IMG/VR virus record: IMGVR_UViG_3300023179_000009
Location: 62,001-126,000 of that record
Reading direction: 5' to 3' (one strand)
DNA length: 64,000 nucleotides
In this document: positions 9,163 through 59,936 of the stretch, one piece after another
How positions within the stretch are numbered: position 1 is the stretch's first letter
How the letters are laid out: each line of letters starts with the position of its first letter
The notes under the pieces: model-generated
Database searches by the model: none
What the model was told of the DNA's origin: nothing
What the model saw: the letters and a program-made list of their open reading frames with translations, nothing else
Program-made: the position numbers and the translations under genes

Positions 9163-9983
9163 TAGATAGCCAACGTAAGACACTTACAAGCACCACCTGA
9201 TTTGAGAAACTCTGTCATCGGGATTTCAATCACGGTGTATCCTAATTTAGAAAGTTTTTCACAAGTTTTTGGGCAGTTACTCGGGATTATTATTGTTTTA
9301 AAAACTTGAACAGCGTTACAGGCAAAATGTATTGCTTCTTCTTCGGGTACAATTATCTCATTTCCTTTTATTTTGCGTATTTTACCAATACTTTCTTTTT
9401 CAAAAGCCTTGGGAAATATCAAATAATCCATATTTTCCAAAGGACAAAAGCAGGTGTCCAGATGATAAAAGCGAGGGTCTATTAAGCGTACTATTTTGAT
9501 TTCTTTTTTTAAGTATTTTTTAATTTCTTGATAAACACGAATGTCCGTTCTGAAGCCGTGTCCACCAACTAGATGTTCTCCTAAAAATAAACAATCACCA
9601 GCACCTTCAAAATCATATTTTGTAAAAACAACCTTGTCTCCCCTATTTTCAAAATAATCAGCAAAGTGTTGGGTTTCTCCTTGTCTTTCTTTGTGTTTAA
9701 ATTTAGAAACCATAAGTGTCTTGGTGTCTTTTAAATACAAACCGGCGTTTGCTGTGAACACCATGTCCGGTAAATTTTTTTGTGGTAAAATTTTATTTAA
9801 TTTTGCCCCCGATTCTTTCAGGCTCTTACATAATAAGCCCCACTGTTTTAAAAATATTTTTTTGGATGTTTTAGAATTTTTACTCATCCAAGGATTGATT
9901 TCATAATCAATACCAAAATAAGTTGGTCTACAAACTAAAATGTTTTTAAAATCTTTTTTGTTTTCACAAAATATATTTTGCAT
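9162..9983 (-). CDS. Amidinotransferase / dimethylargininase family protein
   Basis: LPDMVFTAN, FEGAGD, FYHLDTCF, EFLKSGGACKCLTL. Confidence 0.9.
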   Translation of the reverse strand: MQNIFCENKKDFKNILVCRPTYFGIDYEINPWMSKNSKTSKKIFLKQWGLLCKSLKESGAKLNKILPQKNLPDMVFTANAGLYLKDTKTLMVSKFKHKERQGETQHFADYFENRGDKVVFTKYDFEGAGDCLFLGEHLVGGHGFRTDIRVYQEIKKYLKKEIKIVRLIDPRFYHLDTCFCPLENMDYLIFPKAFEKESIGKIRKIKGNEIIVPEEEAIHFACNAVQVFKTIIIPSNCPKTCEKLSKLGYTVIEIPMTEFLKSGGACKCLTLAI

Positions 9984-10633
9984 TAAAACATTCCCAGTTC
10001 TGCTCCAGCGGGTTTTGGTGGCATGGGGCTTTGAGGATTTTGATTAACGCTGGTTTGTGGTTGTTGCCCCATCATTCCTGCCATGGGCTCAGCCATACCG
10101 CTATCAACCTGAGTATTGTCTGGTTGGTTTTCTGGGCTGTTTTGTTGTTGATTTTGTTGAACTGGATTTTGCTTTGGGGGCATAATTTCTGTTTTGGGTG
10201 TTGGTTTGGGGTCGTCTACCTTTGGAAAATCTGCGTCTATAAATTTTTCGAAAACTTCTTTGCCAAACAATTTTTGAAGAAGCAAACTAACCGTTGTGGA
10301 GGCATTTGCGGTTTGTTCTTGATTTTTTGTGTCTAACCATCTTCTTGTGTCTTCGATGTTTTTTTTCATCTCTGGGTCGTTTAAACCCTCTAAACGAGAA
10401 AAAATTTGGCCATTTTCTAATCTTTTTCTAGTGGCTTGTTTTCCTCTAAAAAAATTATTTGGTTTCTCTGTGTTCCTTTGATTAAAAGTTATTTTGCTTA
10501 AAGATTGTTGAGAGGCATCCTCGTCAGATAAGCCCTCTATTCCCAAAGCTCTAAAGGTATCTGCCCAGATACTTTTTAATTCTTTTACTTTGTCTTTCTC
10601 TGAATTTTCTAGCCAAATTTTAAATTTCACCAT
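9983..10633 (-). CDS. Hypothetical, Gln/Pro-rich tail, capsid-targeting-like N-terminus
   Basis: MVKFKIWLE; TATAAATA 5 nt upstream. Confidence 0.7.
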   Translation of the reverse strand: MVKFKIWLENSEKDKVKELKSIWADTFRALGIEGLSDEDASQQSLSKITFNQRNTEKPNNFFRGKQATRKRLENGQIFSRLEGLNDPEMKKNIEDTRRWLDTKNQEQTANASTTVSLLLQKLFGKEVFEKFIDADFPKVDDPKPTPKTEIMPPKQNPVQQNQQQNSPENQPDNTQVDSGMAEPMAGMMGQQPQTSVNQNPQSPMPPKPAGAELGMF

Positions 10634-10665: not shown

Positions 10666-11442
10666 ATGAAATTTAAAAAATACTTTGAATCTGTGGATAT
10701 TTTTGGTTTTGACACCAAACAAGATTCTTTTGATAAAAACGATGTTTTTCTAAGTAATCCTATAAATCAATTTAATATCGAATTGATGATGAGTATTTTG
10801 TCTCAAAAAAAACTAGGATTTCAAGAAGCAAATTGTTCTTTTTCCAATGAAATCAAATGGGGCAATCAACCTGGATCTTTGAAATTAGAAGTGGATACGG
10901 GTTACACATTTTATTTAAAACAATTAGGAATAGACAAACAAGGTAACCCACGATGGGTTACAAAAAAAATGTTTCAATTAAATCGTCAAGGTTATGGCGG
11001 TACCGAAGATGCTGTTGCTCAAGAGATATTTGAGCAAATCGAAAAATTGTCTTATTCCAATATCGAATCTCCAAAAGAAGACAAGTATAATCTCGGTCTT
11101 TTAGTTGACAACATTTACAAAAAAATAATACGAACTGGAAAATCGATATTCGTTCCAGAAGGTATCAAGAAAATGAATGAAAATTCTTATATTATAAAAT
11201 TTGGCCTAAAAGGGGCTGGTTTAGAGGCACCTGACGGGCAGCGAGTGGAACAAAATCAAACTATGATTTCGTATGATGAAAGTTCTGGGACTATACGTGT
11301 TACCAATTATAATATAGAATCTCCAGTTGGGGGCAAGAGTAGTTGGAGATTAAAGCCAAATGATTTGGATTTGTATTTTTTCCCAACGCAAGACCGCAAC
11401 GAAATAAGCGAAACAATTGCCGTCCACATGAAATATTATTAA
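10666..11442 (+). CDS. Hypothetical, capsid-targeting-like N-terminus
   Basis: 258 aa, MKFKKYFE. Confidence 0.7.
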   Translation: MKFKKYFESVDIFGFDTKQDSFDKNDVFLSNPINQFNIELMMSILSQKKLGFQEANCSFSNEIKWGNQPGSLKLEVDTGYTFYLKQLGIDKQGNPRWVTKKMFQLNRQGYGGTEDAVAQEIFEQIEKLSYSNIESPKEDKYNLGLLVDNIYKKIIRTGKSIFVPEGIKKMNENSYIIKFGLKGAGLEAPDGQRVEQNQTMISYDESSGTIRVTNYNIESPVGGKSSWRLKPNDLDLYFFPTQDRNEISETIAVHMKYY

Positions 11443-11823: not shown

Positions 11824-12234
11824 ATGAAAACTTTCAATGAGTGGATTAAAATAAAAGAACAAGGGCAAATGCACATGGGGAGACCAAATGGGCCAATGGG
11901 TCCAGATGGAAAAGTTTATGGGTGGAGCGGTGGCCCAGCATCTCAAGTTCAAGGAACTGGCACTTGGAAATCAGGACAAAGTTCTGTTGCCACCGGTCGC
12001 CAACTAACACCAGCCCCAGTTCCTTCTTTACCAAAAACAAACAACCAACCCGTTAACGACGAAAAAGAGGCCGAAGGTTTATGGAGTGCCAACAATAGCG
12101 TTGTTCGTGGGGGCTACCTATCTGGTGTCAATAATTATCAACAATTAGTAAATAAAAATTGGCAACAATTACCTCCTGAGGTTAAAGAAATAGCCAAAAA
12201 ATCAATGTTCTCTAGATCTCCTTTTGGAAAATAA
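11824..12234 (+). CDS. Hypothetical, capsid-targeting-like N-terminus
   Basis: ATG at 11824 after GAGG; MKTFNEWIKIKE. Confidence 0.7.
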   Translation: MKTFNEWIKIKEQGQMHMGRPNGPMGPDGKVYGWSGGPASQVQGTGTWKSGQSSVATGRQLTPAPVPSLPKTNNQPVNDEKEAEGLWSANNSVVRGGYLSGVNNYQQLVNKNWQQLPPEVKEIAKKSMFSRSPFGK

Positions 12235-38480: not shown

Positions 38481-38966
38481 ATGTTGCGTAGTTTTAAAGA
38501 ATTTGTGTTGTCTCAAAAAAATGCTCAATTCAAAGAGCAAGATGCCGCTCCATCAATTGGAGCCGCTCCGGAAACTCCTTTAAATCCCAAAAACTCCACA
38601 ACAAATAAGCATTTTTTTTCTTCGTTAAAAAGACAAATGGGTATGGATAATGATGGTTTGCGTGCTACTTTGGAAGGAGATGCCGTTACAATTTTTCAAG
38701 TTCCCGATTATTCTAAAAAATGGGGATTTTTGGTGGCTGGTCCATGTCCAGCGGTTTTATCTCAAAGAAAAGACGGAAATTATGACATTACTTATTTGTT
38801 AACTCAAAAACAATTATTAAACCCAGAATCTTTTATTTTGTCCTACAAAGCAGGTGACGACATAAACACCTACACTGGAAAAATTGAAGATAAAACAGAG
38901 ATAATAGACTCTGAAAGTTTACAAGACATACTTACAAAACCTTTTTCTTCTTTATCGCCAACATGA
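38481..38966 (+). CDS. Hypothetical, capsid-targeting-like N-terminus
   Basis: MLRSFKEFV. Confidence 0.7.
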   Translation: MLRSFKEFVLSQKNAQFKEQDAAPSIGAAPETPLNPKNSTTNKHFFSSLKRQMGMDNDGLRATLEGDAVTIFQVPDYSKKWGFLVAGPCPAVLSQRKDGNYDITYLLTQKQLLNPESFILSYKAGDDINTYTGKIEDKTEIIDSESLQDILTKPFSSLSPT

Positions 38967-39121
38967 AATTCAAAAAATGGCTAGAAATGACTGACACATC
39001 AAGTGTTGCTGGTTTTTCCAGAAGAGTGGGCTTTGGAAGGCGATGGTGGGTTTCCGATTGGGAACAAAAATTACTAAATTCTCAAAAAAATCAAAAATCA
39101 AAAATTAACAAATCTAAATAA
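38963..39121 (+). CDS. 52-aa protein, capsid-targeting-like N-terminus (not in ORF track)
   Basis: MKFKKWLEMTDTSSVAGFSRRVGFG...; ATGA overlap with upstream stop. Confidence 0.6.
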   Translation: MKFKKWLEMTDTSSVAGFSRRVGFGRRWWVSDWEQKLLNSQKNQKSKINKSK

Positions 39122-40995: not shown

Positions 40996-41898
40996 ATGTA
41001 CTTACTAAAAACATACGATGAATCTTTAAATCAAATAATTAATAATGGAACTTATAGAACAAACAAAAGAACCAAAATTAGAACACGATCTATTTTTGGT
41101 CTGATCAACAGATATAGACTGGATACCGATTATTTTCCTATTGTTACTCGCCGCAAAGTTTACCCCAAGTCAGTTTTTGCTGAATTATTGTGGTTCCTAT
41201 CTGGGTCAACAAACAATAAAGATCTTCAATCTTTAGGTTGTAATTTTTGGTCGCCTTGGGTTGACTCGGATTTTGAAACAAAGAATGGATTTGCTGAGAA
41301 TCTATTTGGTCCAGTGTATGGCTTCCAACTACGACACTTTGGCGGGGAATACGGAAACGGAATAGGCGGAAAATCTTTTACAAATCAAGATAATGTTTTA
41401 GGTCAAAATTGCTATGGTAAAGATGGGTTTGATCAATTAAAGTGGGTCATTGATAGAATTAAAAGTGATCATTCTTGTAGAAGGACTCTTTGGACTTTGT
41501 GGAATCCAAAAGATTTAGAAAGATCAAGATTGCCTCCTTGTCACATGATGTATCAGGTCTTAGTAGACGACGATAGAAGATTGACGGGCATCATGTATCA
41601 AAGATCTTGCGATTTTCCAATAGGTGTTCCTGCAAATATTCAATTCTATAGCGCATTAACGGTGATGATTGCCCAACAAACTGATTGTTTGCCTTATGAA
41701 TTTGTTCATTTCACAGGTGACTCTCATGTTTATGACGATCAAATTGAAGGTGTTAAAAAATATTTAGAACTACCTATAATCAATAGCCCTAAATTAAAAA
41801 TAAATAAGGCCAAAGATATTTTTAGTTATAGACCAGAAGATTTTGAAATAATTGATTTCGTGTCTGGTCCTAAAATAGAAATTCCAGTGGCGGTGTGA
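40996..41898 (+). CDS. thyA: Thymidylate synthase
   Basis: ELLWFLSG, GPVYGFQLR, RLPPCH, YQRSCD, GVPANI, GDSHVY. Confidence 0.97.
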   Translation: MYLLKTYDESLNQIINNGTYRTNKRTKIRTRSIFGLINRYRLDTDYFPIVTRRKVYPKSVFAELLWFLSGSTNNKDLQSLGCNFWSPWVDSDFETKNGFAENLFGPVYGFQLRHFGGEYGNGIGGKSFTNQDNVLGQNCYGKDGFDQLKWVIDRIKSDHSCRRTLWTLWNPKDLERSRLPPCHMMYQVLVDDDRRLTGIMYQRSCDFPIGVPANIQFYSALTVMIAQQTDCLPYEFVHFTGDSHVYDDQIEGVKKYLELPIINSPKLKINKAKDIFSYRPEDFEIIDFVSGPKIEIPVAV

Positions 41899-42414
<516 letters not shown>

Positions 42415-42417
42415 TTA

Positions 42418-42846
42418 GTGCAAAATTTTAAATTTAAATATTTTTTTGAACAAATGTATTCTTCAATCGGCGTTGTTGAATATGGACCCGGTTTGAAGGT
42501 TGTTGCTATTATAGATCAAGGAATTGTTGACTTTTATAGGAATTTGATACCAAAATATTATAATGTTAATCCTCAAAAACACAAAGCCCATATAACAATT
42601 GTTCGTGAAAATAAAGAAAGCCCCAAAAATATGGAATTTTGGGGCAAATACCAAAATAAAAAAATAGATTTTTTTTATGATAACAATGTACAAACAGATG
42701 GTGTTTATTTTTGGCTTGACGCATTAAGTGAAGATATCGGAAAAATAAGAGAAGAATTGGGTCTTTCAAAATTTAGAGATGATAGAGAATTTGGGGGCAA
42801 ACTTAGATCTGCATACCACATTACAATTGCGAACACAAAAACATGA
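42418..42846 (+). CDS. 2H phosphoesterase
   Basis: Two HxT motifs: AHITIV and YHITIA. Confidence 0.75.
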   Translation: MQNFKFKYFFEQMYSSIGVVEYGPGLKVVAIIDQGIVDFYRNLIPKYYNVNPQKHKAHITIVRENKESPKNMEFWGKYQNKKIDFFYDNNVQTDGVYFWLDALSEDIGKIREELGLSKFRDDREFGGKLRSAYHITIANTKT

Positions 42847-43001
42847 AAAAAAATAAAAAAGATTTTTTGGATGCAGCAACAATATTTTATATTGGTAGAA
42901 TTACATTTATTGCAATTTTTCAAGCTGTTGTGGGCAGATTTTTTGTAAAAACTTTTGAGCCTTATTGGATCAAATTTAAAGATTGGTATTCAAAAAAATG
43001 A
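42843..43001 (+). CDS. 52-aa hypothetical protein (not in ORF track)
   Basis: ATGA overlaps at both ends. Confidence 0.5.
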   Translation: MKKNKKDFLDAATIFYIGRITFIAIFQAVVGRFFVKTFEPYWIKFKDWYSKK

Positions 43002-44392
43002 ATGTGGATGTTGTCGATAAATTTTTAAAAAATAATAGAAACAAAAAAATTAAAATTCATTGCATTGGCGATGCAATTATAGATGAATACTACAATGTAA
43101 AAGTAGACAGAATCAGTCCCGAACACCCTGTCCCTGTTATGTCTTGTCAAAACGAACATGTCTCCAGACCTGGGGGCGTAGCTAATGTTGCCTATCAATT
43201 AAAGCATCTTAATGTTGATTCAATTCTTACGTGTTTTCCTGATGAGAATGCTTTAAATTTGTTTCAAAATCATAAAATTAAAATAAAATGCAAAGAACTA
43301 CCTGTAAAACCTATAATTCCAGTAAAAAGAAGATATTTAGACGACGACATTCAGGTTGCCCCAAGACATGATTTTGAATTTCCTTTTTGCAATTTAAAAG
43401 CCAAAGATATTGATGATTATTGCTTGTTTGTCAAACAAGCAATAATCGAAGAAAAACCAGACGTTGTAATTCTGTCGGACTACGATAAAGGTTTTTTTTC
43501 AAGTGAAAATTATAAGATAATAGATTTTTGTAAAGGTATAAAAACTATAGTCGATCCAAAAAAAGCACCTTTAGAAAAGTGGAAAGGATGCACAGTTTTT
43601 AAACCCAATTCAAAAGAATCCAATGAACTGACAGGTAAAAAACACTGGCGTGATCAGGCAAAATTTTTATATGATTTCCTTGAGTGCGAATCTGTTGTGA
43701 TTACTTTTGGTGGAGAAAAAGTAGTTGGAATTTACAAGGAAGAGTTTTTTGAATTTTATCCTAAAAATAAAGTATCCAATGTTCAAAGTGTTATAGGTGC
43801 CGGTGATTGTTTTATGGCCTTTTTTGCAACGGCTGTAGGTCACGGATTTAACCCGATAGAATCCTCAGAGATTGCTTGGACAGCAGGGTCTGTTTATGTT
43901 CAACATAAAAAAAATCGTCCAGTTGTCCCGGCAGAACTTTGTGCCAGCAAAATAGTTTTTCCAGAGGATTTAAGATCAAGAGATTTTAAATTGGTCTTTA
44001 CTAACGGTTGTTTTGACATTTTGCATAAAGGCCACATTGAGACACTTAAATTTGCCAAAAGCAAAGGCGACAAACTGGTTGTTGCTTTAAACTCGGATGA
44101 TAGTATTAAAATTATAAAAGGACCGAACAGGCCCGTTGTCTCTCTTGAGCAGCGTATGTCGGTTATGGAATCTATTCAATATGTAGATTTTGTTGTTTTT
44201 TTTGACGAAGACAATCCTTTGAGTTTGATTAAAAAAATACAACCTGATGTTGTTGTTAAAGGCTCAGAATATAATTTGGATTCTATTGTTGGTCACGATA
44301 TTGTTAAAGAAGTTTATCAAGCACCTATGGTGCCAAATATTAGCACTAGCATTATTCTTAAAAATTATTTCTCTGAGCAAACGCAATCTTGA
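42998..44392 (+). CDS. hldE: Bifunctional ADP-heptose synthase HldE/RfaE-like
   Basis: PfkB kinase (PGGVANV, LSDYDKG, VIGAGD) fused to nucleotidyltransferase (FTNGCFDILHKGH, VVKGSEY). Confidence 0.88.
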   Translation: MNVDVVDKFLKNNRNKKIKIHCIGDAIIDEYYNVKVDRISPEHPVPVMSCQNEHVSRPGGVANVAYQLKHLNVDSILTCFPDENALNLFQNHKIKIKCKELPVKPIIPVKRRYLDDDIQVAPRHDFEFPFCNLKAKDIDDYCLFVKQAIIEEKPDVVILSDYDKGFFSSENYKIIDFCKGIKTIVDPKKAPLEKWKGCTVFKPNSKESNELTGKKHWRDQAKFLYDFLECESVVITFGGEKVVGIYKEEFFEFYPKNKVSNVQSVIGAGDCFMAFFATAVGHGFNPIESSEIAWTAGSVYVQHKKNRPVVPAELCASKIVFPEDLRSRDFKLVFTNGCFDILHKGHIETLKFAKSKGDKLVVALNSDDSIKIIKGPNRPVVSLEQRMSVMESIQYVDFVVFFDEDNPLSLIKKIQPDVVVKGSEYNLDSIVGHDIVKEVYQAPMVPNISTSIILKNYFSEQTQS

Positions 44393-44563: not shown

Positions 44564-45388
44564 ATGGATAATAAAATTGGTTTTTGTTTCACCGGAGAGG
44601 GTGCCAGAGGATCCATACAGTCTGGAATTGCTTTAGGGCTTCACAAGCAAGGGATTGATGCTGATTTTACTATCGGAATATCATCCGGTTCCATATGTGC
44701 TGCATCTTATGCTTATTTGGGACCACAAGGTGTTGCTGATATGTGGTCCGATATAAAAAATATTTTTGATGTTTTTGGTTTTAATTATAACTTTTTTTGG
44801 AAGTCTGGGTTACTTAACCAAAAACCCATGGAGAAAATTGTAAGAAAAGCTGTTCAAAATCAACCTATATGCGAAAGCGTTGTTGTAAGAATGAATATTG
44901 AAAATGGTTATATGGACTATGTTTCAAACACATCAGTTGATAAAGAGCAATTCGTTGAGGCTGTTTTGGGGAGCGTGGCTATCACCGCTCTTGTTGAAGA
45001 CAGGGATGGCTGGGTAGACGCAGGAAGCAGGCAATTGGCTCCTTTAGAGCAGTGCATATCGGCTGGCTGCAATAAAATTTATGTTATTATGGGTAGAAGA
45101 TTTGATATTGACGAATGGAAAAAACCAAAAGGCTTCTTATCTGCTACAAGAATGGCTTATCGTGCATTGGACATAAGTCTTAACGAAATAATGATGAGAG
45201 ACATAAATTTTTGTTTGAAAAATGAGGATAATCCGGGTTATCGAGGTGTTGAGATACATCTGGTGCAACCAAAAGAAACACTGTTTGAGTCTGTTAGTTT
45301 TAATCGTTGTAAGGACGGCGTAAAATATGGCGAATCTAATTTTGAAATTGCCGATAGGAAAGGATTGATAAAATATTTCTCTTTGTGA
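44564..45388 (+). CDS. Patatin-like phospholipase
   Basis: GEGARG, GISSG nucleophile, WVDAG. Confidence 0.85.
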   Translation: MDNKIGFCFTGEGARGSIQSGIALGLHKQGIDADFTIGISSGSICAASYAYLGPQGVADMWSDIKNIFDVFGFNYNFFWKSGLLNQKPMEKIVRKAVQNQPICESVVVRMNIENGYMDYVSNTSVDKEQFVEAVLGSVAITALVEDRDGWVDAGSRQLAPLEQCISAGCNKIYVIMGRRFDIDEWKKPKGFLSATRMAYRALDISLNEIMMRDINFCLKNEDNPGYRGVEIHLVQPKETLFESVSFNRCKDGVKYGESNFEIADRKGLIKYFSL

Positions 45389-45398
45389 TATATATTTT

Positions 45399-45713
45399 AT
45401 GAGTTTATCTTTTAAAAATTGGCTGAAATCAGAGTCGCAAGCTATAGGATCCACTGGTAAAAGTGATTTACCAACAGGAGTCGCCAAGGCTGCTGGAAAA
45501 GTTGCTCAAAGTTTTTTAGCTCAAGACGCAAACGCATCCGATGTTGCAAAAATTGTTGGCAAAACCAATAACACTTCAAATCTAATCAAATTAGGAGCAC
45601 AAGCCGTCGAAACCGCCCCGAACTCTGATGCCAAGGGGACAAATGCCTTGCAGGTTGCTAGTGCCATTCAAAAAACTGCCGCACAAACAAAACTTAAAAT
45701 GAACAAAAAATGA
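45399..45713 (+). CDS. Ala-rich hypothetical, capsid-targeting-like N-terminus
   Basis: MSLSFKNWLKSE. Confidence 0.7.
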   Translation: MSLSFKNWLKSESQAIGSTGKSDLPTGVAKAAGKVAQSFLAQDANASDVAKIVGKTNNTSNLIKLGAQAVETAPNSDAKGTNALQVASAIQKTAAQTKLKMNKK

Positions 45714-46305: not shown

Positions 46306-48393
46306 ATGTCTGACAAATCATCGACCCTTAAAAAATATTCTGATTTTTATGATCGTAAAGAATTTTTGTCTTTAAATGAAGAAATGTCTTTTGGTGAATA
46401 TTTGGATCTATGTCGAGAAAACCCAAAACTAGCCAGAAATGCTTTTCAATATGTTTACGACATGATAGTTGAAAAAGGTACCAGCACCTTTGAAAGATAC
46501 AGAAAAACTTATACTAAGTATCATTTTTTTGATGATAATGAGATACCAGTTTTTGGATTAGAAGAAACGTTGTCAAGTTTTGTTGATTTTATTCACGGGG
46601 CAGCAGGCGGTTACGGTACCGAACACCGTGTTCTATTATTACATGGCCCAGTCGGTTCTTCAAAATCAACAATTTGCCGCAGGCTTAAACGTGGTTTGGA
46701 ACAATATTCAAAAACGCAGGACGGTGCTTGGTATACATTTAAATGGGTAAATTTGCCAGTTGTTGCGGATGATAAAGGACCGGCTGTTTTTGTAAACAAA
46801 GAAGATGTTTGTCCAATGAACGAAAATCCAATCAAACTCATGCCCGGATCAATGAGAAAAGAATTTTTGAAAGATTTAAATGAAAAACTAAAAGACTCCT
46901 CATCAGAAGTCGAGCGAGAAACTCTTTATGTGCTTGATAGTGAGGGCGATTTAAATCCAAGATGTAAACTTTTTATGTCGATGCTTTTAAAGAGATACGA
47001 TGGTGATTGGGCTGCGGTTGTTGAAAACCACGTTAGAGTAATTCGTCGCACCCACTCCGAAACGGACAGGGTTGGAATTGGAACCTTTCAACCTAAAGAT
47101 GAAAAAAACCAAGACTCCACAGAGTTAACTGGCGATATGAATTTTAGCAAGATAGGTCAATTCGGCTCGGACTCTGATCCTCGTGCTTTTAATTTTGATG
47201 GCGAATTTGAAATTGCCAATCGTGGTGTTTGTGAATTTATTGAAATGCTTAAACTTGATAATGCTTTTCTTTATGACCTTTTAGGAGCAACCCAAGAACA
47301 TTCTATTAAACCAAAGAAATTTTCTCAGGTTAATATAGATGAGGTCATTGTTGCTCACACTAATAACCCAGAATTTGAGAAGTTAAAGAATAATCAATTT
47401 ATGGAAGCACTAAGAGATAGAACAGTTAAGGTGGATGTTCCTTATCTCTTACGTTGGAGTGATGAAATTAAAGTTTACGAACACACTTACGGCCCAGGCA
47501 AAGTTCGTCAACACATAATGCCTCACACTCTTGAGATAGCTGCTTTATTTGCTGTGCTAACTCGATTGGAAGATGATGGTAATGGCAAACTTGATTTGCG
47601 GGATAAGGCTAAACTTTATGATGGAAAGCAACTCCCAGGCTGGACAGAAGACACTGTCAAGGAATTGCGTGATAAATTCCCAGATGAGGGCTTTCACGGT
47701 CTTTCGGCAAGATATGTTCAAGATAAGATTGCAAATCGTCTTGCTCGTCACAAAGATTATGTGAATGTTTTTCATGTTTTGAGCGAACTTAAAGATGGTT
47801 TAAGTCAATCTTCTTTGATAACTAAGGTAGAAGACATTAAGAGATATGAATTTTGTGCAGAGTTGGCAATTAAAGAATTGGATGAAATTTTGAAAAATGA
47901 AGTTCAACGTGCCTTAGTTTCAGATGAGAAGGCTATAGAGCGTATGTGTTCTAAGTATGTTGATAACGTAATAGCTTATGTTAATGATGAAAAAATGATT
48001 CATCCAATCACGGGATCTAAAATGGACCCTGATGAGCGATTGATGCGTTCTATTGAAGAAAAGGCAGGCATACCAGAGCAAGGTTGTGATGATTTTAGAA
48101 GAAGTTTGGCAGCTTTTATAGGCACACTTGCTACTCGTCAAAAACAATTCAAGTGGGATAGCAACCCTGAGTTGAAGCGTGCTTTGGAGTCTAAAGTTTT
48201 TGAAGATGTTAAGGACACTATTAAATTATCTTCTTTAACAAAAGAAGCTTCTCAACTAGATCCTGATCTTCAAGAAAAAATAGACGCCATCAAAACAAGG
48301 TTGATAAAGCAGTACGGATACAATCAACAATCAGCAACCGATGTTTTAGAATATTGTAGTTCTATTTTTGCAAGAGGAGACATTCAAAGATAA
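46306..48393 (+). CDS. prkA: PrkA/YeaG family AAA+ serine kinase-like protein
   Basis: LLHGPVGSSKST, QDSTELTG, ANRGVCEFIE, AHTNNPE, EALRDR. Confidence 0.93.
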   Translation: MSDKSSTLKKYSDFYDRKEFLSLNEEMSFGEYLDLCRENPKLARNAFQYVYDMIVEKGTSTFERYRKTYTKYHFFDDNEIPVFGLEETLSSFVDFIHGAAGGYGTEHRVLLLHGPVGSSKSTICRRLKRGLEQYSKTQDGAWYTFKWVNLPVVADDKGPAVFVNKEDVCPMNENPIKLMPGSMRKEFLKDLNEKLKDSSSEVERETLYVLDSEGDLNPRCKLFMSMLLKRYDGDWAAVVENHVRVIRRTHSETDRVGIGTFQPKDEKNQDSTELTGDMNFSKIGQFGSDSDPRAFNFDGEFEIANRGVCEFIEMLKLDNAFLYDLLGATQEHSIKPKKFSQVNIDEVIVAHTNNPEFEKLKNNQFMEALRDRTVKVDVPYLLRWSDEIKVYEHTYGPGKVRQHIMPHTLEIAALFAVLTRLEDDGNGKLDLRDKAKLYDGKQLPGWTEDTVKELRDKFPDEGFHGLSARYVQDKIANRLARHKDYVNVFHVLSELKDGLSQSSLITKVEDIKRYEFCAELAIKELDEILKNEVQRALVSDEKAIERMCSKYVDNVIAYVNDEKMIHPITGSKMDPDERLMRSIEEKAGIPEQGCDDFRRSLAAFIGTLATRQKQFKWDSNPELKRALESKVFEDVKDTIKLSSLTKEASQLDPDLQEKIDAIKTRLIKQYGYNQQSATDVLEYCSSIFARGDIQR

Positions 48394-48442
48394 TCAATAA
48401 TTATATTTAATATTGTAAACATTATTGAGAGCGAGGTGTGCT

Positions 48443-49621
48443 ATCCCTAAAAGAATTCAAGAAGATCACAAAAGATTCAGGGACGTAGTTTCCGGAAGAA
48501 CAAGAAGGGAACTCAAGCGTCTAATCAAATCAGGTGCGATAGTTCGGCAAAGGCCAAAAGGTGGCAAGGTTACTATTTCCATTCCACAAATTGACATTCC
48601 ACACTTTGTTCATGGTGACTCAGGTGAAGGGATTGGTCGGGGTCCGGGGAAAGAAGGTGATACTATTGGCCGTGACCCACAGCCCGGTAATGGCAATCAA
48701 GCTGGAGATCAAGAAGGTGAGGGCATTCACATTCAAATCGACATGGAGGATGTTCTTGCTTTTATGGAAGAAGAGTTAAAACTTCCATTTATGAAACCTA
48801 AGCCGAACGAAACATTTGAAGAAGTTAAGATCAAGTATAATGATATTTCAAAAGTTGGTCTTAACTCATTGCGGCACACACGCCGTACAATGAAAGAAGC
48901 ATTGAAGCGTCTGGCGATGGGAGGCAAGTTGGACCAAGTTCAACTTGTCCCCGGAGCCAGCGTTCCAATGAAAGTTATAACACCTATTAAACAAGATTTT
49001 CGTTATAGGCAATATCGTGAAATAAAAATACCAGCATCCAATGCTGTGATATTTTTCGCCAGAGATTGCTCTGGATCGATGGATGATTATAAGTGCGACA
49101 TAGTTTCGGATATGGCTTGGTGGATAGACCGTTGGATAAAAAGATTTTATAAAAGGGTAGATCATTGTTATTATGTTCATGACACACGTGCTCAAGAAGT
49201 TAATGAGCAAGAATTTTATACTTATAGATACGGGGGAGGAACCCAATGCTCCTCGGCATTTGAATCAATATCCCAGCAATTTGAAAACAGATATCCTCCT
49301 CAAAAATTTAACATTTATGTTTTTTATTTCACCGATGGCGATAATTGGGATAATGATAATGAAAAAGTAGTAAAAATAATTCAAGAAAAATTTCCTCAAG
49401 GAGTTGTAAATTTCGTAGGAATAACTCAAATTTGTTCATATTCAAATGAAAATAGTGTAAAAGAATTTATTGATAGAAAAATAAAATCAAATGAACTTGA
49501 CGCAGAACACATCAGAACTGCCGAAGTTGGATCAAATCTAAGAAATGGCAAAATGAGTGAAGATGATCGGAACAGTCAGATTCTGGATGCCATTAAAAAA
49601 CTCTTATCTGTAGAAGCATGA
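48443..49621 (+). CDS. yeaH: YeaH/YhbH (DUF444) vWA protein
   Basis: MIDAS DCSGS, GGGTQCSS, YFTDGDNW; probable ATC start after GAGGTG. Confidence 0.9.
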   Translation: MPKRIQEDHKRFRDVVSGRTRRELKRLIKSGAIVRQRPKGGKVTISIPQIDIPHFVHGDSGEGIGRGPGKEGDTIGRDPQPGNGNQAGDQEGEGIHIQIDMEDVLAFMEEELKLPFMKPKPNETFEEVKIKYNDISKVGLNSLRHTRRTMKEALKRLAMGGKLDQVQLVPGASVPMKVITPIKQDFRYRQYREIKIPASNAVIFFARDCSGSMDDYKCDIVSDMAWWIDRWIKRFYKRVDHCYYVHDTRAQEVNEQEFYTYRYGGGTQCSSAFESISQQFENRYPPQKFNIYVFYFTDGDNWDNDNEKVVKIIQEKFPQGVVNFVGITQICSYSNENSVKEFIDRKIKSNELDAEHIRTAEVGSNLRNGKMSEDDRNSQILDAIKKLLSVEA

Positions 49622-50613
49622 GTGATAAAAAGTTTAAAGAATTTGTTGACCAAGGTGTTGCGGCAGCAAATAATTATTTTTATACTGGTAGATATGTTAA
49701 CGCTTTAGAAATACTGTCAGCAGTTAAACAGGTTGATCCGAATAATGATATTGTTGAGTTGCTTATTCAGAAAATTTGTTGTGAACAATTTAATATCAAG
49801 TCTCCCGATTTAAATTATTATTTTGGAGAACATTGGCTTGGTCAATCGCTAGAAAATAAAAGTATAGAAATTTTTTGTGACCAAGGAATGGGAGACACAA
49901 TAAATTTACTTCGTTATGTAAAACAATTAAAGAAAGAATATCCCAATTGTAAAATTGTTTTGAATTATTATGCTTTTTTTAATCAATTTGAAAGGTTAAT
50001 GCAAAATCAATCTTATATTGATTTATTTACTCCTTTTCACACTAAGTGTGATTATCATACAAATATAATGAGCTTACCTTGTATTCTTAATGGGATACAA
50101 CTTGATATTTATTACCCGGTTCATTTTGATAAAATCTTAGACTTGCCTCCGCCGCCTCAAATTTATTTTGAAGAATTTGAATCTTTAAATTTAAGTGATA
50201 AAAATAAAATAGGTGTAGTTTGGCAAACAAATATAGATAATCCATTATCTAAACAAAAATCAATAAATGTTGAACTTTTTGATATTTTTAAAGATTTAGA
50301 TTTTGAATTTTATTGTTTACAACCACAGGTCAAAACCCCAGATTGGATCGATTGTTTGCCAATCGAAGACCTACACGACACAGCCAGATTCATAACACAA
50401 TGTGATTTTATTATATCTGTTGATACTGTCACACTGCATCTTGCTGGAGTTTTAGGTAAAAAAACTTTTGGATTAATTCCTTTTGATCACGATCCCAGAT
50501 GGGGCGAAGGCTCCAATAACATTTGGTACCCATCAGTGGAGTTGTTTAGACAAAACAATGATCAAGATTGGTCTATTGCTCTAAATCAAATAAAAGATAA
50601 AATAAAAATTTAA
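49618..50613 (+). CDS. TPR plus GT9-like (heptosyltransferase-type) glycosyltransferase
   Basis: DQGMGDTI, IGVVW, IISVDTVTLHLAG, PRWG. Confidence 0.75.
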   Translation: MSDKKFKEFVDQGVAAANNYFYTGRYVNALEILSAVKQVDPNNDIVELLIQKICCEQFNIKSPDLNYYFGEHWLGQSLENKSIEIFCDQGMGDTINLLRYVKQLKKEYPNCKIVLNYYAFFNQFERLMQNQSYIDLFTPFHTKCDYHTNIMSLPCILNGIQLDIYYPVHFDKILDLPPPPQIYFEEFESLNLSDKNKIGVVWQTNIDNPLSKQKSINVELFDIFKDLDFEFYCLQPQVKTPDWIDCLPIEDLHDTARFITQCDFIISVDTVTLHLAGVLGKKTFGLIPFDHDPRWGEGSNNIWYPSVELFRQNNDQDWSIALNQIKDKIKI

Positions 50614-56215: not shown

Positions 56216-59043
56216 TTGGAAACTACAGGATACGAAAACCTTCATAGACATAGCGATTTTAGCCTCAAAATTTAGGGGCCTTAATGACGAAAGTCATTAA
56301 GCAAACTGGATGAATTCGGGGAAGCCCTAACGTAAAGACGAGGGTAATCCCGAGCCAAGCATGTAATGCATTACATGAAGGTGTAGAGACTACTGGCGAG
56401 GTTTAGCCCTCTTAATTACCAGCAAGAGCGTCCAGCACCCCTAGGGGTGATGATATAGTCCACTCCACAAGAAACTGTGGGCAAAAGTGCTTAGACGGGT
56501 TTGCAAAAGTATCTGAATATGCCGAGTATCAAAAGCAAATAAATCAAAAGTATTTGTGTATCACCGATCATGGTGTGATGGGGGCTATTCCACAACAAGT
56601 TGCAGAATCTGAAAAACATAATTTATATCCTTTGTTTGGATGTGAACTTTATGTTAATCCGATGCAACCAAAAGTTTCTTCACGATCAGAGTCGGCGGAG
56701 TTTCGTAAATCTTTAGAAGATGAAGCAACGCAAAAAAAGTTTGATAAATCTTATCATTTATTGGCCATAGCCTACAATGATGAGGGTTATTCTAATCTTG
56801 TTCGTTTAACTTCTTGGGGCTGGATACACGGCTTCTATAGAAAGCCTAGGGTAAATCATGAAGCACTCATGAAATATAAAGAAGGAATTGTGTTCACCTC
56901 CGCCTGTGCCAACTCAGAAATAGCAAGAGCTTTTTTTGATGGTGGCGACGAGGCTGGCTTCGCCATGTTGGAAAAATATATGGCTATGTTTGGTGAGCAT
57001 TTTTATCTTGAACTTATGATGCTCGATTTTAAAGATCAAAAGCCTTATGATGCTTTTTTAATTCGTGCTCATGATAAGTATCATGTTCCGCTGACAATGA
57101 GCACCGATTGTTTTGTTAAAGGCACTTTGGTTCTAACTAATTTTGGTTTCAAAAATATCGAAGAAATTAAAGTTGGCGATAAGGTTTTTACTCATAAAAA
57201 CAGGTGGAGGTTAGTTGAACATGTTGGATCACGTTCACTAAGATCAAATGAAAAAATTTACCGTGTATCAACTAGTGCTGGTACATTTGCTTATGAAGCT
57301 ACGGGCAATCACGAAGTATATGTGGCCACTTATGAAAAAAATAAATGGAACTTTGATTGGGTAAGAACAGACGGATTGAAATCAAAAGAACACCACCTCA
57401 CAGTTCCTAAGATAAGTGAATCTAAAGTTTTCTCCGAAAAGGATTTAAGCGAAATAGATATTTTGTCCTTCTTGAAAAAAGAAGATTTTCAAGAAGGAAC
57501 AGACTACAAATCATCCAGAAAAGGCAACATGGGTTGCCGCCTTCAGTTCAACAGGGACACTCAAGAATTTTGGTCTTATCGTGGTTGGGATAGAAAATTT
57601 AGAACCACTATTCCCAGAATGTTAAAGGTAGATGATGATTTTGTTAAAATGTTGGGATGGTATATCGCTGAAGGTTGGAGTGAAAAAAATAGCAATCAGG
57701 TGGGTTTTGCTTTTCACATAGAAGAAAAACATGTAGCTGAGTGGTTAATTTCTTATTTTTCACGTTTTGATATTATTGCAAAGATTTATAAGGTCTCTGA
57801 GAACGGTATAGCAATTCGTTTTTCTTCAGTTGTCTTTAATCGTCTTTTGGGTCAAATGTGTGGTTTTGGTGCTAAAAACAAACATCTACCGAAGCCCAAC
57901 AATCAAGTTTGGCTAAAGATGTGGTCGAAAAGACAACTTTCTATGATTATTCGTGAGTATTGGCGTGGCGATGGGGGCAACGCTGCAAATAATGATGGTT
58001 TTATTTTCACATCCACATCTAAAATTTTAATACAAGAGATCGCTTTTGTTTTTAATTCTTGTGGTGTTTTTTCTTTACCTTGTGAAGAAAAAAATAGAAA
58101 AGATACATGGAATACCAAAAAATATATATCCTACACGGGAGGAAGAGGCGATCAAGTGTTGTCTTTTTTAACGAATGGAGATTGTAAGCCTTTTTTGCAC
58201 AAGGAAGTAATTGAATTTAAAGATTATTATTTGGTGCCAATCAAAGAAATCACTGCTCTTAAACACCAAGAACAAGAAGTTCACTGTTTTCAGGTAAAGG
58301 ACGATCATTCGTTCACTGCTAATCTTTACGCTGTGAGTAACTGCCACTACTGTCTTAAAGAGCAAAGTCATAATCAACGTCTTATGCTCATGCAGCAAAA
58401 CAAAAGAACGCTTGCTGAGATGGAGGCACTTGTAGAATCCGGCCAAGCAGAGGATCTATTTGAACTACAAGACACAAATCTATGGCTGAAGAGTGAGGAT
58501 GAACTAAATGAAATGTGGGAAGAAAAATTTCAAGATGTTATCGATTATGAACTTTTCAAACAATCCAAAGCAAACACAGTCAAGATTGCAGAGTTTGCCA
58601 AAGGCGTACAAATCAATAAAGAAATAAAACTTCCTAAAATAAATGACGCAGATGCACTTTTGTGGGAAGAAATCAAAAAAGGTTTTATGAAGCGTGGTTG
58701 TCCTAGAACTCCTGTTTATATAAAGCGAATCCGTGAAGAATACGATCTAATTTCAGAGAAGGGCTTTTCTAGTTACTTTTTAATTCAAAAAATGATGGTG
58801 GATGAAGCTCGAAGGAAGAGTCCAGAGATATTAGGTTTTGGAGACGGATCAGAAGCCGTTGGTCCTGGTAGAGGTTCGGTTGCTGGCTCTTTGGTTGCCT
58901 ATTGTCTTCGTCTTCATGATGTGGAGCCAATATTCCACGATTTGAGATTTAGTCGTTTTCTAAGTCCAGCACGTGGTGGCAAGCAAATGAAAATTCGCCA
59001 CACAATAGACCCAATATCTCATGAATCAATCAATTTGGATTAA
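56216..59043 (+). CDS. dnaE: DNA polymerase III alpha, N-terminal part only (PHP plus start of palm); exons 56216-56265 and 56490-59043; contains intein
   Basis: TTG start after AGGAGA; spliced HRHSDFSLLDG, TDHG, GCE, STD|CHY, GPGRGSVAGSLVAY, RFSRFLSPAR then stop. Confidence 0.9.
56266..56489 (+). ncRNA. Group I intron (224 nt, no ORF) in dnaE
   Basis: P GAATTCGGGGAA, Q AATCCCGAGC, R GTAGAGACTA (56383), S GATATAGTCC (56452); U.G in P1, terminal G; removal restores the frame. Confidence 0.92.
57109..58341 (+). mobile_element. Intein with LAGLIDADG endonuclease (411 aa) in DnaE PHP domain
   Basis: CFVKGTLVLT...VGDKV, ATGNHEV, MLGWYIAEG, REYWRGDG, ...AVSN|C. Confidence 0.93.
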
Positions 59044-59936
59044 TATCTGTTCATCATTCTTCGCATATATGATTTCATCAATGCTTTTTGCAAATTGTGA
59101 ACAGCGGGATGATCTTTAAACATTTCGGGATTCATTTCGGGCATTTGGTCATCTTTTTCCATTGAGGCTTCCATGTCCTCATCTTCCATGCCTTCCATGT
59201 CCTCATCTTCCATGCCTTCCATGTCCTCATCTCCCATGCCTTCCATGTCCTCATCTTCCATGCCTTCCATGTCCTCATCTTCCATGCCTTCCATGTCCTC
59301 ATCTTCCATGCCTTCCATGTCCTCATCTCCCATGCCTTCCATGTCCTCATCTTCCATGCCTTCCATGTCCTCATCTTCTTCATCGTGATCAACTTGGTCA
59401 TCATCATGATCTTCTTGGCTTAGTTGATTGTGAAAAGGAGCGGCAACTTCTTCGTTCATGGCTCTTGCCAACTTGTTACACATGTCTGGTCCGTATGATT
59501 CGTGGGCCATAACCTCAGAGATGTGTTTGTAGGTTTCACGGTGATTCAAACACTCTGCCACAAGACAGCCTAGTAAACCACTCTGTTTTAGGTTTCTTAC
59601 TAAAGTTTCAATAATAACAGGGTTTTTAGAAGAGGCTTTTGTTACTTTTGATAAAAGAGCAGACTCCTCAACAGTAGGCAATTTGACAGATTTTTTTTCA
59701 TTATTTGCTTCTTGAGTTTTTGGCTCATAAACCAACTCGTCATCGCCTTCGCCTGCTAATCCTTTTGATGAATTTTTTTTACCCTTGGTTGTTTTAGCAA
59801 CATAAGGAGATTTGCCACCTTCTGGGCGATCAGGTGAGGTTGATGGGTCCACATTATCTCCATCGTTGCATACCTTGGGCTTGTCTTGTAATTTTCCTTT
59901 AGAATCCAAGTATTCATCAAATTTCATAAAAGCCAT
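59040..59936 (-). CDS. Acidic repeat protein, capsid-targeting-like N-terminus
   Basis: MAFMKFDEYLD; EDEDMEGM repeats; SD GAGG. Confidence 0.75.
   Translation of the reverse strand: MAFMKFDEYLDSKGKLQDKPKVCNDGDNVDPSTSPDRPEGGKSPYVAKTTKGKKNSSKGLAGEGDDELVYEPKTQEANNEKKSVKLPTVEESALLSKVTKASSKNPVIIETLVRNLKQSGLLGCLVAECLNHRETYKHISEVMAHESYGPDMCNKLARAMNEEVAAPFHNQLSQEDHDDDQVDHDEEDEDMEGMEDEDMEGMGDEDMEGMEDEDMEGMEDEDMEGMEDEDMEGMGDEDMEGMEDEDMEGMEDEDMEASMEKDDQMPEMNPEMFKDHPAVHNLQKALMKSYMRRMMNRY
59169..59378 (-). repeat. 24-bp coding tandem repeat, 8.75 units
   Basis: EDEDMEGM units; GDEDMEGM variant at units 3 and 7. Confidence 0.95.

What the first reader, a model, noticed from the sequence alone, without database searches (positions are those of the whole stretch)
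42418..42846. 2H phosphoesterase carrying the putative packaging leader
Seen: two HITI motifs, FKYFFE leader, TAAATA 4 nt before the start. Established: the T4 anti-CBASS protein Acb1 is a 2H phosphodiesterase that degrades cyclic oligonucleotides; other 2H enzymes process RNA 2',3'-cyclic ends. Inference: a signal-degrading or RNA-repair enzyme possibly pre-loaded in the virion.
Basis: partly seen in the sequence, partly recalled or inferred. Interest (0 to 1): 0.6.

Follow-up and report, generated by a model that had tools for sequence, protein, structure and literature searches.

The report
Leader-tagged 2H phosphoesterase in huge phage
A 459-kb freshwater phage encodes a small two-histidine (2H) phosphoesterase from an uncharacterised viral family, closer to RNA-repair 2H domains than to the anti-CBASS enzyme Acb1, and it is preceded by a weak copy of a T4-like capsid-targeting leader that at least 40 other genes of the phage carry.

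Summary

It is not an Acb1-family member. No family member hits Pfam Acb1, a profile comparison with T4 Acb1 fails, and the same genome has a true Acb1-family gene elsewhere. The nearest family is 2H-SAK, the 2H domain of multi-enzyme RNA-repair proteins. RNA 2',3'-cyclic-phosphate end healing is therefore the favoured activity. It is untested.

The leader class is real. At least 40 genes start M-K-x-F-x-E-W-L-x-E, which resembles the T4 capsid targeting sequence MKTYQEFIAE. They are linked to a TAAATA box 4-6 nt upstream, and the genome has a T4-type head module with a gp21-like protease. This gene's copy is degenerate and starts with GTG, and most homologues lack a leader. Packaging of this enzyme is plausible (about 0.3) but unproven.

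The parts
42408..42413 (+). TAAATA box, 4 nt before the GTG start. It overlaps the last codons and TAA stop of DHFR.
   Evidence: Sequence. Boxes at this spacing are enriched about 10-fold genome-wide and are linked to leader genes, Fisher p = 4e-6. The box is conserved in L002/L003. It is absent in L004, which also lacks the leader.
42418..42453 (+). 12-codon N-terminal leader MQNFKFKYFFEQ from a GTG start. It is a degenerate copy of the genome-wide M-K-x-F-x-E-W-L-x-E leader and ends in F-F-E, a possible protease site after Glu11.
   Evidence: The frame and GTG are kept in L002/L003 and in a 97.6%-identical variant. L004 lacks exactly these 33 nt, in frame.
42433..42450 (+). FKYFFE core of the leader (residues 6-11).
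   Evidence: Compare MKFKKYFES at window 10666 and other leaders.
42435..42440 (+). Second TAAATA, inside the leader and 13 nt before ATG 42454. It could be an alternative promoter for the short form.
   Evidence: Sequence. It is not conserved in L002 or in the X6 variant, which has T42439C.
42454..42846 (+). 130-aa 2H phosphoesterase core. ATG 42454 is an alternative start.
   Evidence: Most of the 90 homologues begin here. The model has pLDDT 92.5. The top 19 hits of an exhaustive PDB comparison are all 2H enzymes.
42589..42606 (+). Motif 1, H58-I-T-I-V-R63, on a beta strand.
   Evidence: H58 and R63 are invariant in 91 sequences. Strand 58-62 in the model.
42748..42750 (+). Arg111, invariant, in helix 105-113 (IREELGL).
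42817..42840 (+). Motif 2, H134-I-T-I-A-N139-T-K141, on a beta strand.
   Evidence: H134 is invariant; N139 and K141 are at least 90% conserved. Strand 133-139 in the model.
42843..43001 (+). 52-aa hydrophobic small ORF. Its ATG overlaps the 2H stop (ATGA) and its stop overlaps the next gene's ATG.
   Evidence: A small ORF is kept at this position in L002, L003, L004 and L008.
40996..42414 (+). Upstream genes of the same tightly spaced cluster: thymidylate synthase (40996-41898) and DHFR (41902-42414).
   Evidence: Pfam E = 8e-81 and 2e-37.
42998..44392 (+). Downstream HldE-like bifunctional heptose-7-P kinase / heptose-1-P adenylyltransferase.
   Evidence: Pfam PfkB + CTP_transf_like. NCBIfam HldE E = 1e-79, below its equivalog cut-off.

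Best explanation
The gene encodes a minimal stand-alone 2H phosphoesterase of about 130 aa. Catalytic His58 and His134 sit in two HxT motifs on facing strands, with invariant Arg63 and Arg111. It belongs to a large, biochemically uncharacterised family of phages and giant viruses whose nearest described relative is the 2H-SAK domain of multi-enzyme RNA-repair proteins.

Most likely activity (inferred): it opens 2',3'-cyclic phosphate ends on cleaved RNA or tRNA. The phage's own RNA ligases and CCA-adding enzymes could then finish the repair after host anticodon- or tRNA-nuclease attack.

In this phage lineage the core is preceded by a 12-codon, degenerate copy of an N-terminal leader that at least 40 other genes of the genome carry, and by the TAAATA box that goes with that leader class. 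By analogy with the T4 capsid targeting sequence, the leader would bring the protein into the prohead core. The gp21-type protease would clip it after Glu11. The enzyme would then be delivered with the DNA.

What is shown: the motifs, their conservation, the 2H fold, the leader class and its link to TAAATA, and the T4-type head module. What is inferred: the substrate, translation from GTG, cleavage, and packaging.

My separate odds: 2H enzyme 0.9. RNA-end healing as the main activity 0.5. The canonical leader class is a prohead-targeting propeptide 0.6. This particular protein is packaged 0.3.
For: Fold and family:
- H58, H134, R63 and R111 are invariant in 91 homologues.
- The model has pLDDT 92.5 with both HxT motifs on strands.
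- 63 of 91 family members hit Pfam 2H-SAK at E <= 0.01. Four hit LigT_PEase, four hit 2_5_RNA_ligase2 and none hits Acb1.
- In the ESM Atlas, apart from the family's own viral clusters, the best annotated structural match by TM-score is a group of 857-aa fungal proteins with RNA_ligase + PTP-SAK + AAA_33 kinase domains (TM 0.61, rmsd 2.8). This beats the LigT clusters (TM 0.50-0.52).
- BFVD hits include long giant-virus proteins named as a dual-specificity phosphatase and an endonuclease/exonuclease/phosphatase family protein.

Repair context:
- A tRNA nucleotidyltransferase lies within about 1.5-3.5 kb of the homologue in K64-1, L009 and L041.
- The genome encodes Rnl2-type RNA ligases and two PolyA_pol-family enzymes. 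One of these, 720 aa with HD + PolyA_pol domains, itself carries a canonical leader.
- Iyer et al. 2021 (PMC7824862) predict jumbo-phage 2H enzymes to clear 2',3'-cyclic ends.

Leader:
- The class is found at 20 N-termini against 1.7 expected, and in at least 40 genes under a looser pattern.
- The T4 capsid targeting sequence is MKTYQEFIAE (PMC8442874), and T4 IPI starts MKTFKEF.
- A gp21-like protease is present (PF03420, E = 9e-26). It sits between a portal and a major-head-protein gene, and three leader genes lie 4 kb downstream of that module.
- At least 12 of 179 family members carry a canonical leader ending ...E-[NQMS] exactly at the core junction.
- L002 keeps the GTG and an open frame, and its leader version scores 4.5. 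L004 lacks the 33 nt in frame and also lacks TAAATA.
- The link between TAAATA and leaders has Fisher p = 4e-6.
- A sister phage (L008) has a leader-tagged Acb1/LigT-like 2H protein.
Against: - There is no biochemical, transcript or proteome evidence. No RNA run holds the locus.
- The window protein itself is below the Pfam 2H-SAK gathering score (17.7 against 27 bits).
- The gene lies in a ThyA-DHFR-HldE cluster, far from the phage's RNA ligases and CCA enzymes. The tRNA-nucleotidyltransferase neighbourhood is absent here and in LR756511.
- The leader is a weak match (score -0.17, below every canonical leader). It is the only leader here that starts with GTG.
- The leader evolves faster than the core: 3 changes in 36 nt against 7 in 393 nt.
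- About 92% of homologues lack a leader.
- AT-rich non-coding DNA readily translates into F/K/Y/N-rich peptides.
Confidence: 0.45

Rival explanations
1. Acb1-like counter-defence enzyme. The protein hydrolyses cyclic di- or oligonucleotide immune signals (CBASS, type III CRISPR and the like) rather than RNA ends.
Against: None of 91 family members hits Pfam Acb1 PF23474. A profile comparison with T4 Acb1 gives probability 0.4%. The genome already has a PF23474 member at 35 bits, above the cut-off, at G000 434387-434908. The nearest family (2H-SAK) and the nearest annotated structure cluster are RNA-repair proteins.
Confidence: 0.2
2. The leader is a relic or is not translated. The protein starts at ATG 42454 and works in the cytoplasm as the 130-aa form seen in most phages. 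The 36 nt upstream are a decaying remnant or spacer, and TAAATA there is just the end of the DHFR gene. This rival concerns only the packaging part, so it can be true together with either activity.
For: Most homologues are about 130 aa and begin at the equivalent Met. The leader matrix score is marginal. It has a GTG start, whereas the other leaders start with ATG. The leader diverges faster than the core. L004 has lost it cleanly. TAAATA overlaps the DHFR codons S-K-stop. A second TAAATA lies 13 nt before the ATG.
Against: GTG and an open 12-codon frame are kept in four variants, with no stop and no frameshift. The replacements move towards the consensus: Q2K gives MKNF. The indel in L004 is exactly 11 codons. 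Canonical leaders stand at the same junction in at least 12 family members. The GTG lies 3 nt after the DHFR stop, matching the tight coupling of this cluster. TAAATA at spacing 4 is the leader-class signature.
Confidence: 0.4
3. Metabolic role tied to the neighbouring genes. The enzyme acts on a small-molecule phosphodiester or cyclic phosphate, for example ADP-ribose 1'',2''-cyclic phosphate or 2',3'-cNMP salvage, within the nucleotide and nucleotide-sugar cluster ThyA-DHFR-2H-HldE.
For: The order ThyA-DHFR-2H-small ORF-HldE is kept in relatives down to 56% identity, and the stop/start overlaps suggest translational coupling. Another homologue lies among LicD, IspD and glycosyltransferase genes. 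Macro-domain genes lie within about 5 kb in K64-1 and phage G.
Against: The synteny is confined to one clade of closely related phages, and other contexts differ. This genome has no macro domain. No known step of ADP-heptose or folate/thymidylate metabolism needs a 2H enzyme (established pathway knowledge).
Confidence: 0.1

Closest known systems
2H-SAK domain (Pfam PF22547) of 'Swiss Army Knife' RNA-repair proteins, including fungal RNA-ligase / kinase / PTP / 2H multi-enzyme proteins
   Same: It is the nearest Pfam family: 63 of 91 family members hit it at E <= 0.01. Apart from the family's own viral clusters, it is the best annotated structure cluster by TM-score (0.61, rmsd 2.8). It has the same two HxT motifs.
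   Different: This protein is a stand-alone 130-aa protein with no fused ligase, kinase or phosphatase. It falls below the Pfam gathering score (17.7 against 27 bits). The family is almost wholly viral. I could not retrieve the paper that defines SAK.
Acb1, the anti-CBASS 2H nuclease (T4 gp57B; phage FBB1, PDB 7T26/7T27; Pfam PF23474)
   Different: There is no sequence or profile relationship. The motif context differs: HITIVR / HITIAN here against HSTICYS / HITLSYN in T4. The genome encodes a separate true Acb1-family protein.
LigT/ThpR and archaeal 2'-5' RNA ligase-like 2',3'-cyclic phosphodiesterases (PF02834, PF13563)
   Different: Those proteins are about 50 residues longer. Only 4 of 91 family members hit each model. 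The arginine follows motif 1 here (HITIVR).
[quoted passage not shown]
   Same: Both are short N-terminal peptides of the form M-K-T-[FY]-x-E-[FW]-[IL]-x-E, ending in hydrophobic-x-Glu, in a phage with a gp21-family prohead protease and a portal-protease-major capsid protein module.
   Different: The leader is far more numerous here (at least 40 genes) and is attached to enzymes as well as to orphan proteins. It comes with a TAAATA box only 4-6 nt from the start. Neither cleavage nor packaging has been shown. The copy on this gene is degenerate and starts with GTG.

Membership tests
2H phosphoesterase superfamily | Two H-x-T/S-x motifs with hydrophobic x, conserved across the family | tested here: met
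   HITI at residues 58-61 and 134-137. H58 and H134 are invariant, and T60 and T136 are at least 90% conserved in 91 sequences.
2H phosphoesterase superfamily | Two-lobed alpha+beta fold with the HxT motifs on strands lining a cleft | tested here: met
2H phosphoesterase superfamily | His-dependent hydrolysis of a cyclic phosphate or phosphodiester | not testable with these tools
   Needs an enzyme assay.
2H-SAK (PF22547) | Score at or above the Pfam gathering threshold (27 bits) | tested here: inconclusive
   The window protein scores 17.7 bits, E = 0.004. 63 of 91 relatives match at E <= 0.01, best 5e-7. Some relatives carry precomputed PF22547 hits. A six-frame scan of the genome found nothing.
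Acb1 (PF23474) | Sequence or profile membership | tested here: not met
   0 of 91 members hit PF23474. hhalign against T4 gp57B gives probability 0.4%. The only PF23474 match in the genome is a different gene, at 434.4-434.9 kb.
Acb1 (PF23474) | Cleavage of CBASS cyclic oligonucleotides | not testable with these tools
   Needs an assay.
LigT/ThpR (PF02834, PF13563, TIGR02258) | Sequence or profile membership | tested here: not met
   The window protein has no hit. Only 4 of 91 relatives hit each model weakly.
T4-type capsid targeting sequence | N-terminal 10-20 aa peptide matching M-K-T-[FY]-x-E-[FW]-[IL]-x-E | tested here: inconclusive
   MQNFKFKYFFEQ has the F-x-x-aromatic-hydrophobic-E core. 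It scores -0.17 against a minimum of 3.4 for canonical leaders of this genome. The orthologue in L002 scores 4.5.
T4-type capsid targeting sequence | Phage has a gp21-family prohead protease and a T4-like head module | tested here: met
   PF03420 E = 9e-26. Portal, protease and major head protein are in T4 order.
T4-type capsid targeting sequence | Leader removed after Glu and mature protein present in virions | not testable with these tools
   The phage is uncultured and no proteome is available.

The most novel reading that the evidence does not exclude
A clade of huge freshwater phages uses a T4-like capsid targeting leader, coupled to a start-proximal TAAATA box (possibly giving leaderless late mRNAs), to load dozens of cargo proteins into the head. 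The cargo would include RNA-repair or anti-signal enzymes such as this 2H phosphoesterase and an HD + CCA-adding enzyme. This gene's two in-frame starts (GTG 42418 and ATG 42454) would yield both a packaged, injected isoform and a cytoplasmic isoform of the same enzyme.
Probability: 0.2. Interest if true: 0.75.

Novelty: new variant of a known kind. Interest (0 to 1): 0.45.

Why it matters
If the leader works as in T4, this phage group injects a pre-made enzyme kit, not only DNA. A virion-borne 2H phosphoesterase could neutralise tRNA-cleaving or nucleotide-signalling defences before any phage gene is expressed. The leader would also give a simple sequence rule for predicting the injected proteome of uncultured huge phages. 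Separately, the family has more than 1,100 clusters at 50% identity and is almost entirely viral. It is a large 2H clade with no assayed member, so one enzyme assay would annotate many genomes.

Tried and rejected
- Sequence and profile searches of the PDB gave only chance hits.
- The weak Pfam hits DUF806 and Nuclease_act (T4 Stp) on the window protein are below their cut-offs, and at most 3 of 91 relatives share them. I treat them as noise.
- NCBIfam gave no hit.
- The Appr>p / macro-domain pathway idea was set aside: this genome has no macro domain.
- T4 gp55 late sigma was not found by protein search. This is uninformative, so the 'late promoter' reading of TAAATA stays an analogy.
- The definition of SAK could not be read.
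- Expression could not be checked: no RNA run holds the locus. Read laying gave contigs only, so it shows no transcript ends.
It was rerun without it.

Full report
**Where the window lies.** The window is bases 62001-126000 of a 458,813-bp IMG/VR phage record (35% GC, CheckV completeness 91%). Near-identical DNA occurs in lake and freshwater metagenomes from several independent studies. It is a huge phage. PHROG hits cover DNA polymerase, helicase and many orphan families. The only related records in the phage collection are jumbo phages of 346-595 kb: LR756511, K64-1, phage G, Phosso, CBB, GAP32 and others.

**Observation.**
- The ORF at 42418-42846 (+) is open from GTG to TGA and is 142 aa long.
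- HITI occurs at residues 58-61 and 134-137.
- FKYFFE is residues 6-11.
- TAAATA lies at 42408-42413, 4 nt before the GTG, and overlaps the last codons and stop of DHFR.
- An in-frame ATG at 42454 (Met13) would give a 130-aa product.

**The protein family.**
- The word-indexed search found 90 homologues (E down to 1e-79), nearly all 120-145 aa and almost none with a name.
- A full profile search found 1,174 clusters at 50% identity (652 at E <= 1e-10). The best 150 are all single-domain proteins of about 115-200 aa.
- His58, His134, Arg63, Arg111, Leu43, Pro45 and Tyr87 are invariant.
- Thr60, Thr136, Asn139, Lys141 and several aromatic residues are at least 90% conserved.
- ESM Atlas clusters for the family are 85-98% viral.

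**Fold.**
- An AlphaFold2 model built from the 91-sequence alignment is confident: pLDDT 92.5, pTM 0.84. Only residues 1-11 are low (about 57), and they are modelled as a lone helix. Both HxT motifs lie on beta strands.
- Foldseek gave only weak E-values, but its best-probability rows were 2H enzymes.

**Which 2H family.**
- Pfam scanning of every family member gave 2H-SAK (PF22547) in 63 of 91 (best E = 5e-7), LigT_PEase in 4, 2_5_RNA_ligase2 in 4 and Acb1 (PF23474) in none.
- The window protein itself is below threshold for 2H-SAK (17.7 against 27 bits).
- A profile comparison with T4 Acb1 (gene 57B, taken from NC_000866) failed, with probability 0.4%.
- The same genome has a separate gene that passes the Acb1 model (35 bits, also PF13563). 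It lies at G000 434387-434908, is 173 aa long, has motifs HVTILYG and HVTIAYV, and has no leader.
- In the ESM Atlas structure search, the family's own viral clusters rank first. Among the annotated clusters below them, the highest TM-score goes to a set of 857-aa fungal proteins with RNA_ligase, PTP-SAK and AAA_33 kinase domains (TM 0.61, rmsd 2.8), ahead of the LigT clusters at 0.50-0.52.
- BFVD hits include long giant-virus proteins named as a dual-specificity phosphatase and an endonuclease/exonuclease/phosphatase family protein.
- The nearest relatives of this 2H core are thus the cyclic-phosphodiesterase modules of RNA end-healing and sealing enzymes.
- Iyer et al. 2021 had already noted 2H enzymes in jumbo phages and predicted that they clear 2',3'-cyclic ends (PMC7824862).

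**Gene context.**
- Here the gene sits in a tightly spaced cluster. Thymidylate synthase and DHFR come first. The 2H gene starts 3 nt after the DHFR stop if GTG is used. A 52-aa hydrophobic ORF follows with an ATGA overlap, and then an HldE-like heptose kinase/adenylyltransferase with another ATGA overlap. Patatin, PrkA and YhbH follow.
- This order is kept in relatives of 88%, 76% and 56% identity, which form one clade.
- Elsewhere the contexts differ. A tRNA nucleotidyltransferase lies within 1.5-3.5 kb in K64-1, L009 and L041, which fits tRNA 3'-end repair. There is no such link in this genome or in LR756511.
- The genome does encode Rnl2-type RNA ligases and two PolyA_pol-family enzymes, far from this gene.

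**The leader class.**
- A pattern search of all candidate N-termini of the genome showed a striking recurrent peptide: MKTFQEWLNEN, MKNFNEWLNES, MKSFNEWLVES, MKFKDWLLKEN, MRFKEFLFLEA, MSKFKQFLIKEE and many more.
- With a strict pattern, 20 genes carry it at the N-terminus against 1.7 expected from its internal frequency. A looser pattern finds about 40.
- Synonymous codons vary between copies, so the constraint is on the peptide.
- It closely resembles the T4 capsid targeting sequence MKTYQEFIAE (PMC8442874) and the start of T4 IPI, MKTFKEF. It ends in hydrophobic-x-Glu, the kind of site that T4 gp21 cuts (PMC5694885).
- The genome has a gp21-family protease (PF03420, E = 9e-26). It lies between a portal gene and a major-head-protein gene, and three consecutive leader genes lie 4 kb further on.
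- Most leader-bearing proteins have no Pfam hit. A few are enzymes: a 720-aa HD + PolyA_pol protein, an FMN reductase, DUF5662 and an M36-like peptidase.
- The same leaders occur in related contigs and in LR756511.

**The TAAATA box.** TAAATA ending 4-6 nt before an ATG is found at 14 genes (about 1.4 expected). Seven of these are leader genes (7 of 40 against 7 of 632, Fisher p = 4e-6). The box often reads TATAAATA, the T4 late-promoter consensus (my own knowledge). At that spacing the transcripts would be nearly leaderless. I found no gp55 homologue by sequence, so this remains an analogy.

**Does this gene really carry the leader?**

*For:*
- TAAATA at spacing 4 from the GTG.
- GTG and an open 12-codon frame are kept in L002/L003 (there MKNFRFKNFFEQ, matrix score 4.5), in P0001, and in a 97.6%-identical population variant (Q2K, Y8H, one synonymous change).
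- The relative L004 lacks exactly these 33 nt in frame, and also lacks TAAATA.
- At least 12 other family members carry a canonical leader that ends ...E-[NQMS] exactly where the core begins, for example MKLFNEWLNEQ, MKFRDWLLQEM and MQFKNWLINEM.
- On a FastTree tree of the cores, the 13 carriers need at least 11 changes of state, so the leader behaves as a mobile module. Support on so short a protein is limited.
- A sister phage tags a different, Acb1/LigT-like 2H protein with the leader.

*Against:*
- The window's own leader scores -0.17, below every canonical copy and only at about the 95th percentile of the null sets.
- It is the only one that starts with GTG.
- It changes faster than the core.
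- AT-rich spacers translate into similar peptides.
- About 92% of homologues have no leader.
- A second, unconserved TAAATA lies 13 nt before the internal ATG.

**Verdict.**
- The gene is a genuine 2H phosphoesterase of a large, uncharacterised, mainly viral family close to 2H-SAK.
- It is not an Acb1-family member, although it could still work like one.
- I favour RNA 2',3'-cyclic-phosphate end healing (0.5) over cyclic-oligonucleotide degradation (0.2) or a metabolic role (0.1).
- The leader class is real and is best explained as a T4-type prohead-targeting propeptide (0.6).
- Whether this enzyme is itself loaded into virions is open (about 0.3).

Noticed in passing
Window 9983-10633(-), 10666-11442(+), 11824-12234(+), 38481-38966(+), 38963-39121(+), 45399-45713(+), 49618-50613(+), 59040-59936(-); genome-wide in G000: At least 40 genes begin with a leader similar to the T4 capsid targeting sequence (M-K-x-F-x-E-W-L-x-E): 20 strict matches against 1.7 expected. 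The same leaders occur in related metagenomic contigs and in the 595-kb phage LR756511.
   Followed up: partly
Genome-wide in G000, for example upstream of window 10633(-), 10666(+) and 11824(+): A TAAATA / TATAAATA box ends 4-6 nt before the ATG at 14 genes (about 1.4 expected). Half of them are leader genes. This suggests nearly leaderless late transcripts. No T4 gp55 homologue was found by sequence.
   Followed up: partly
G000:C1:434387-434908 (+), outside the window (L010:1360-1881): A second 2H gene of 173 aa passes the Pfam Acb1 model (35 bits) and the 2_5_RNA_ligase2 model. It has no leader and lies just upstream of the head module.
   Followed up: partly
L008:2054-2737 (+) (sister phage contig): A 227-aa Acb1/2_5_RNA_ligase2-like 2H protein begins with a canonical leader, MKFKQWLQNE. 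A different 2H enzyme is therefore leader-tagged in a relative.
   Followed up: no
G000:C1:209332-211494 (-) (L031): A 720-aa HD + PolyA_pol (CCA-adding-enzyme-like) protein starts with the leader MKSFNEWLVES. It may be another RNA-repair enzyme cargo.
   Followed up: partly
L006:3592-4411 (-) (phage T4, NC_000866 73591-74410): T4 Acb1 (gene 57B) lies directly beside ipI. It begins MMEFKDFS, reminiscent of the IPI leader MKTFKEF. I know of no report that Acb1 is packaged.
   Followed up: no
G000:C1:436108-450213 (L046): The head module contains portal, a 607-aa ORF, a gp21-like protease, a 298-aa acidic helical protein (scaffold-like) and the major head protein. Three consecutive leader-bearing orphan genes follow at 447547-450213.
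   Followed up: partly
Window 46306-48393 and 48425-49621: A PrkA-family protein kinase and a YhbH/DUF444 protein, a pair usually found together in bacteria, lie side by side in the phage. Both are below the NCBIfam equivalog cut-offs. The next ORF (49618-50613) starts with a leader-like MSDKKFKEFVDQ.
   Followed up: no
Window 42843-43001 and 42998-44392: A 52-aa hydrophobic ORF and an HldE-like ADP-heptose synthesis enzyme are joined to the 2H gene by ATGA stop/start overlaps. A patatin-like phospholipase follows at 44564-45388.
   Followed up: no
Window 41900-43000: A population variant (run X6, labelled seawater metagenome) is 97.6% identical over this stretch. The phage is seen in freshwater and lake metagenomes from several studies.
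   Followed up: partly
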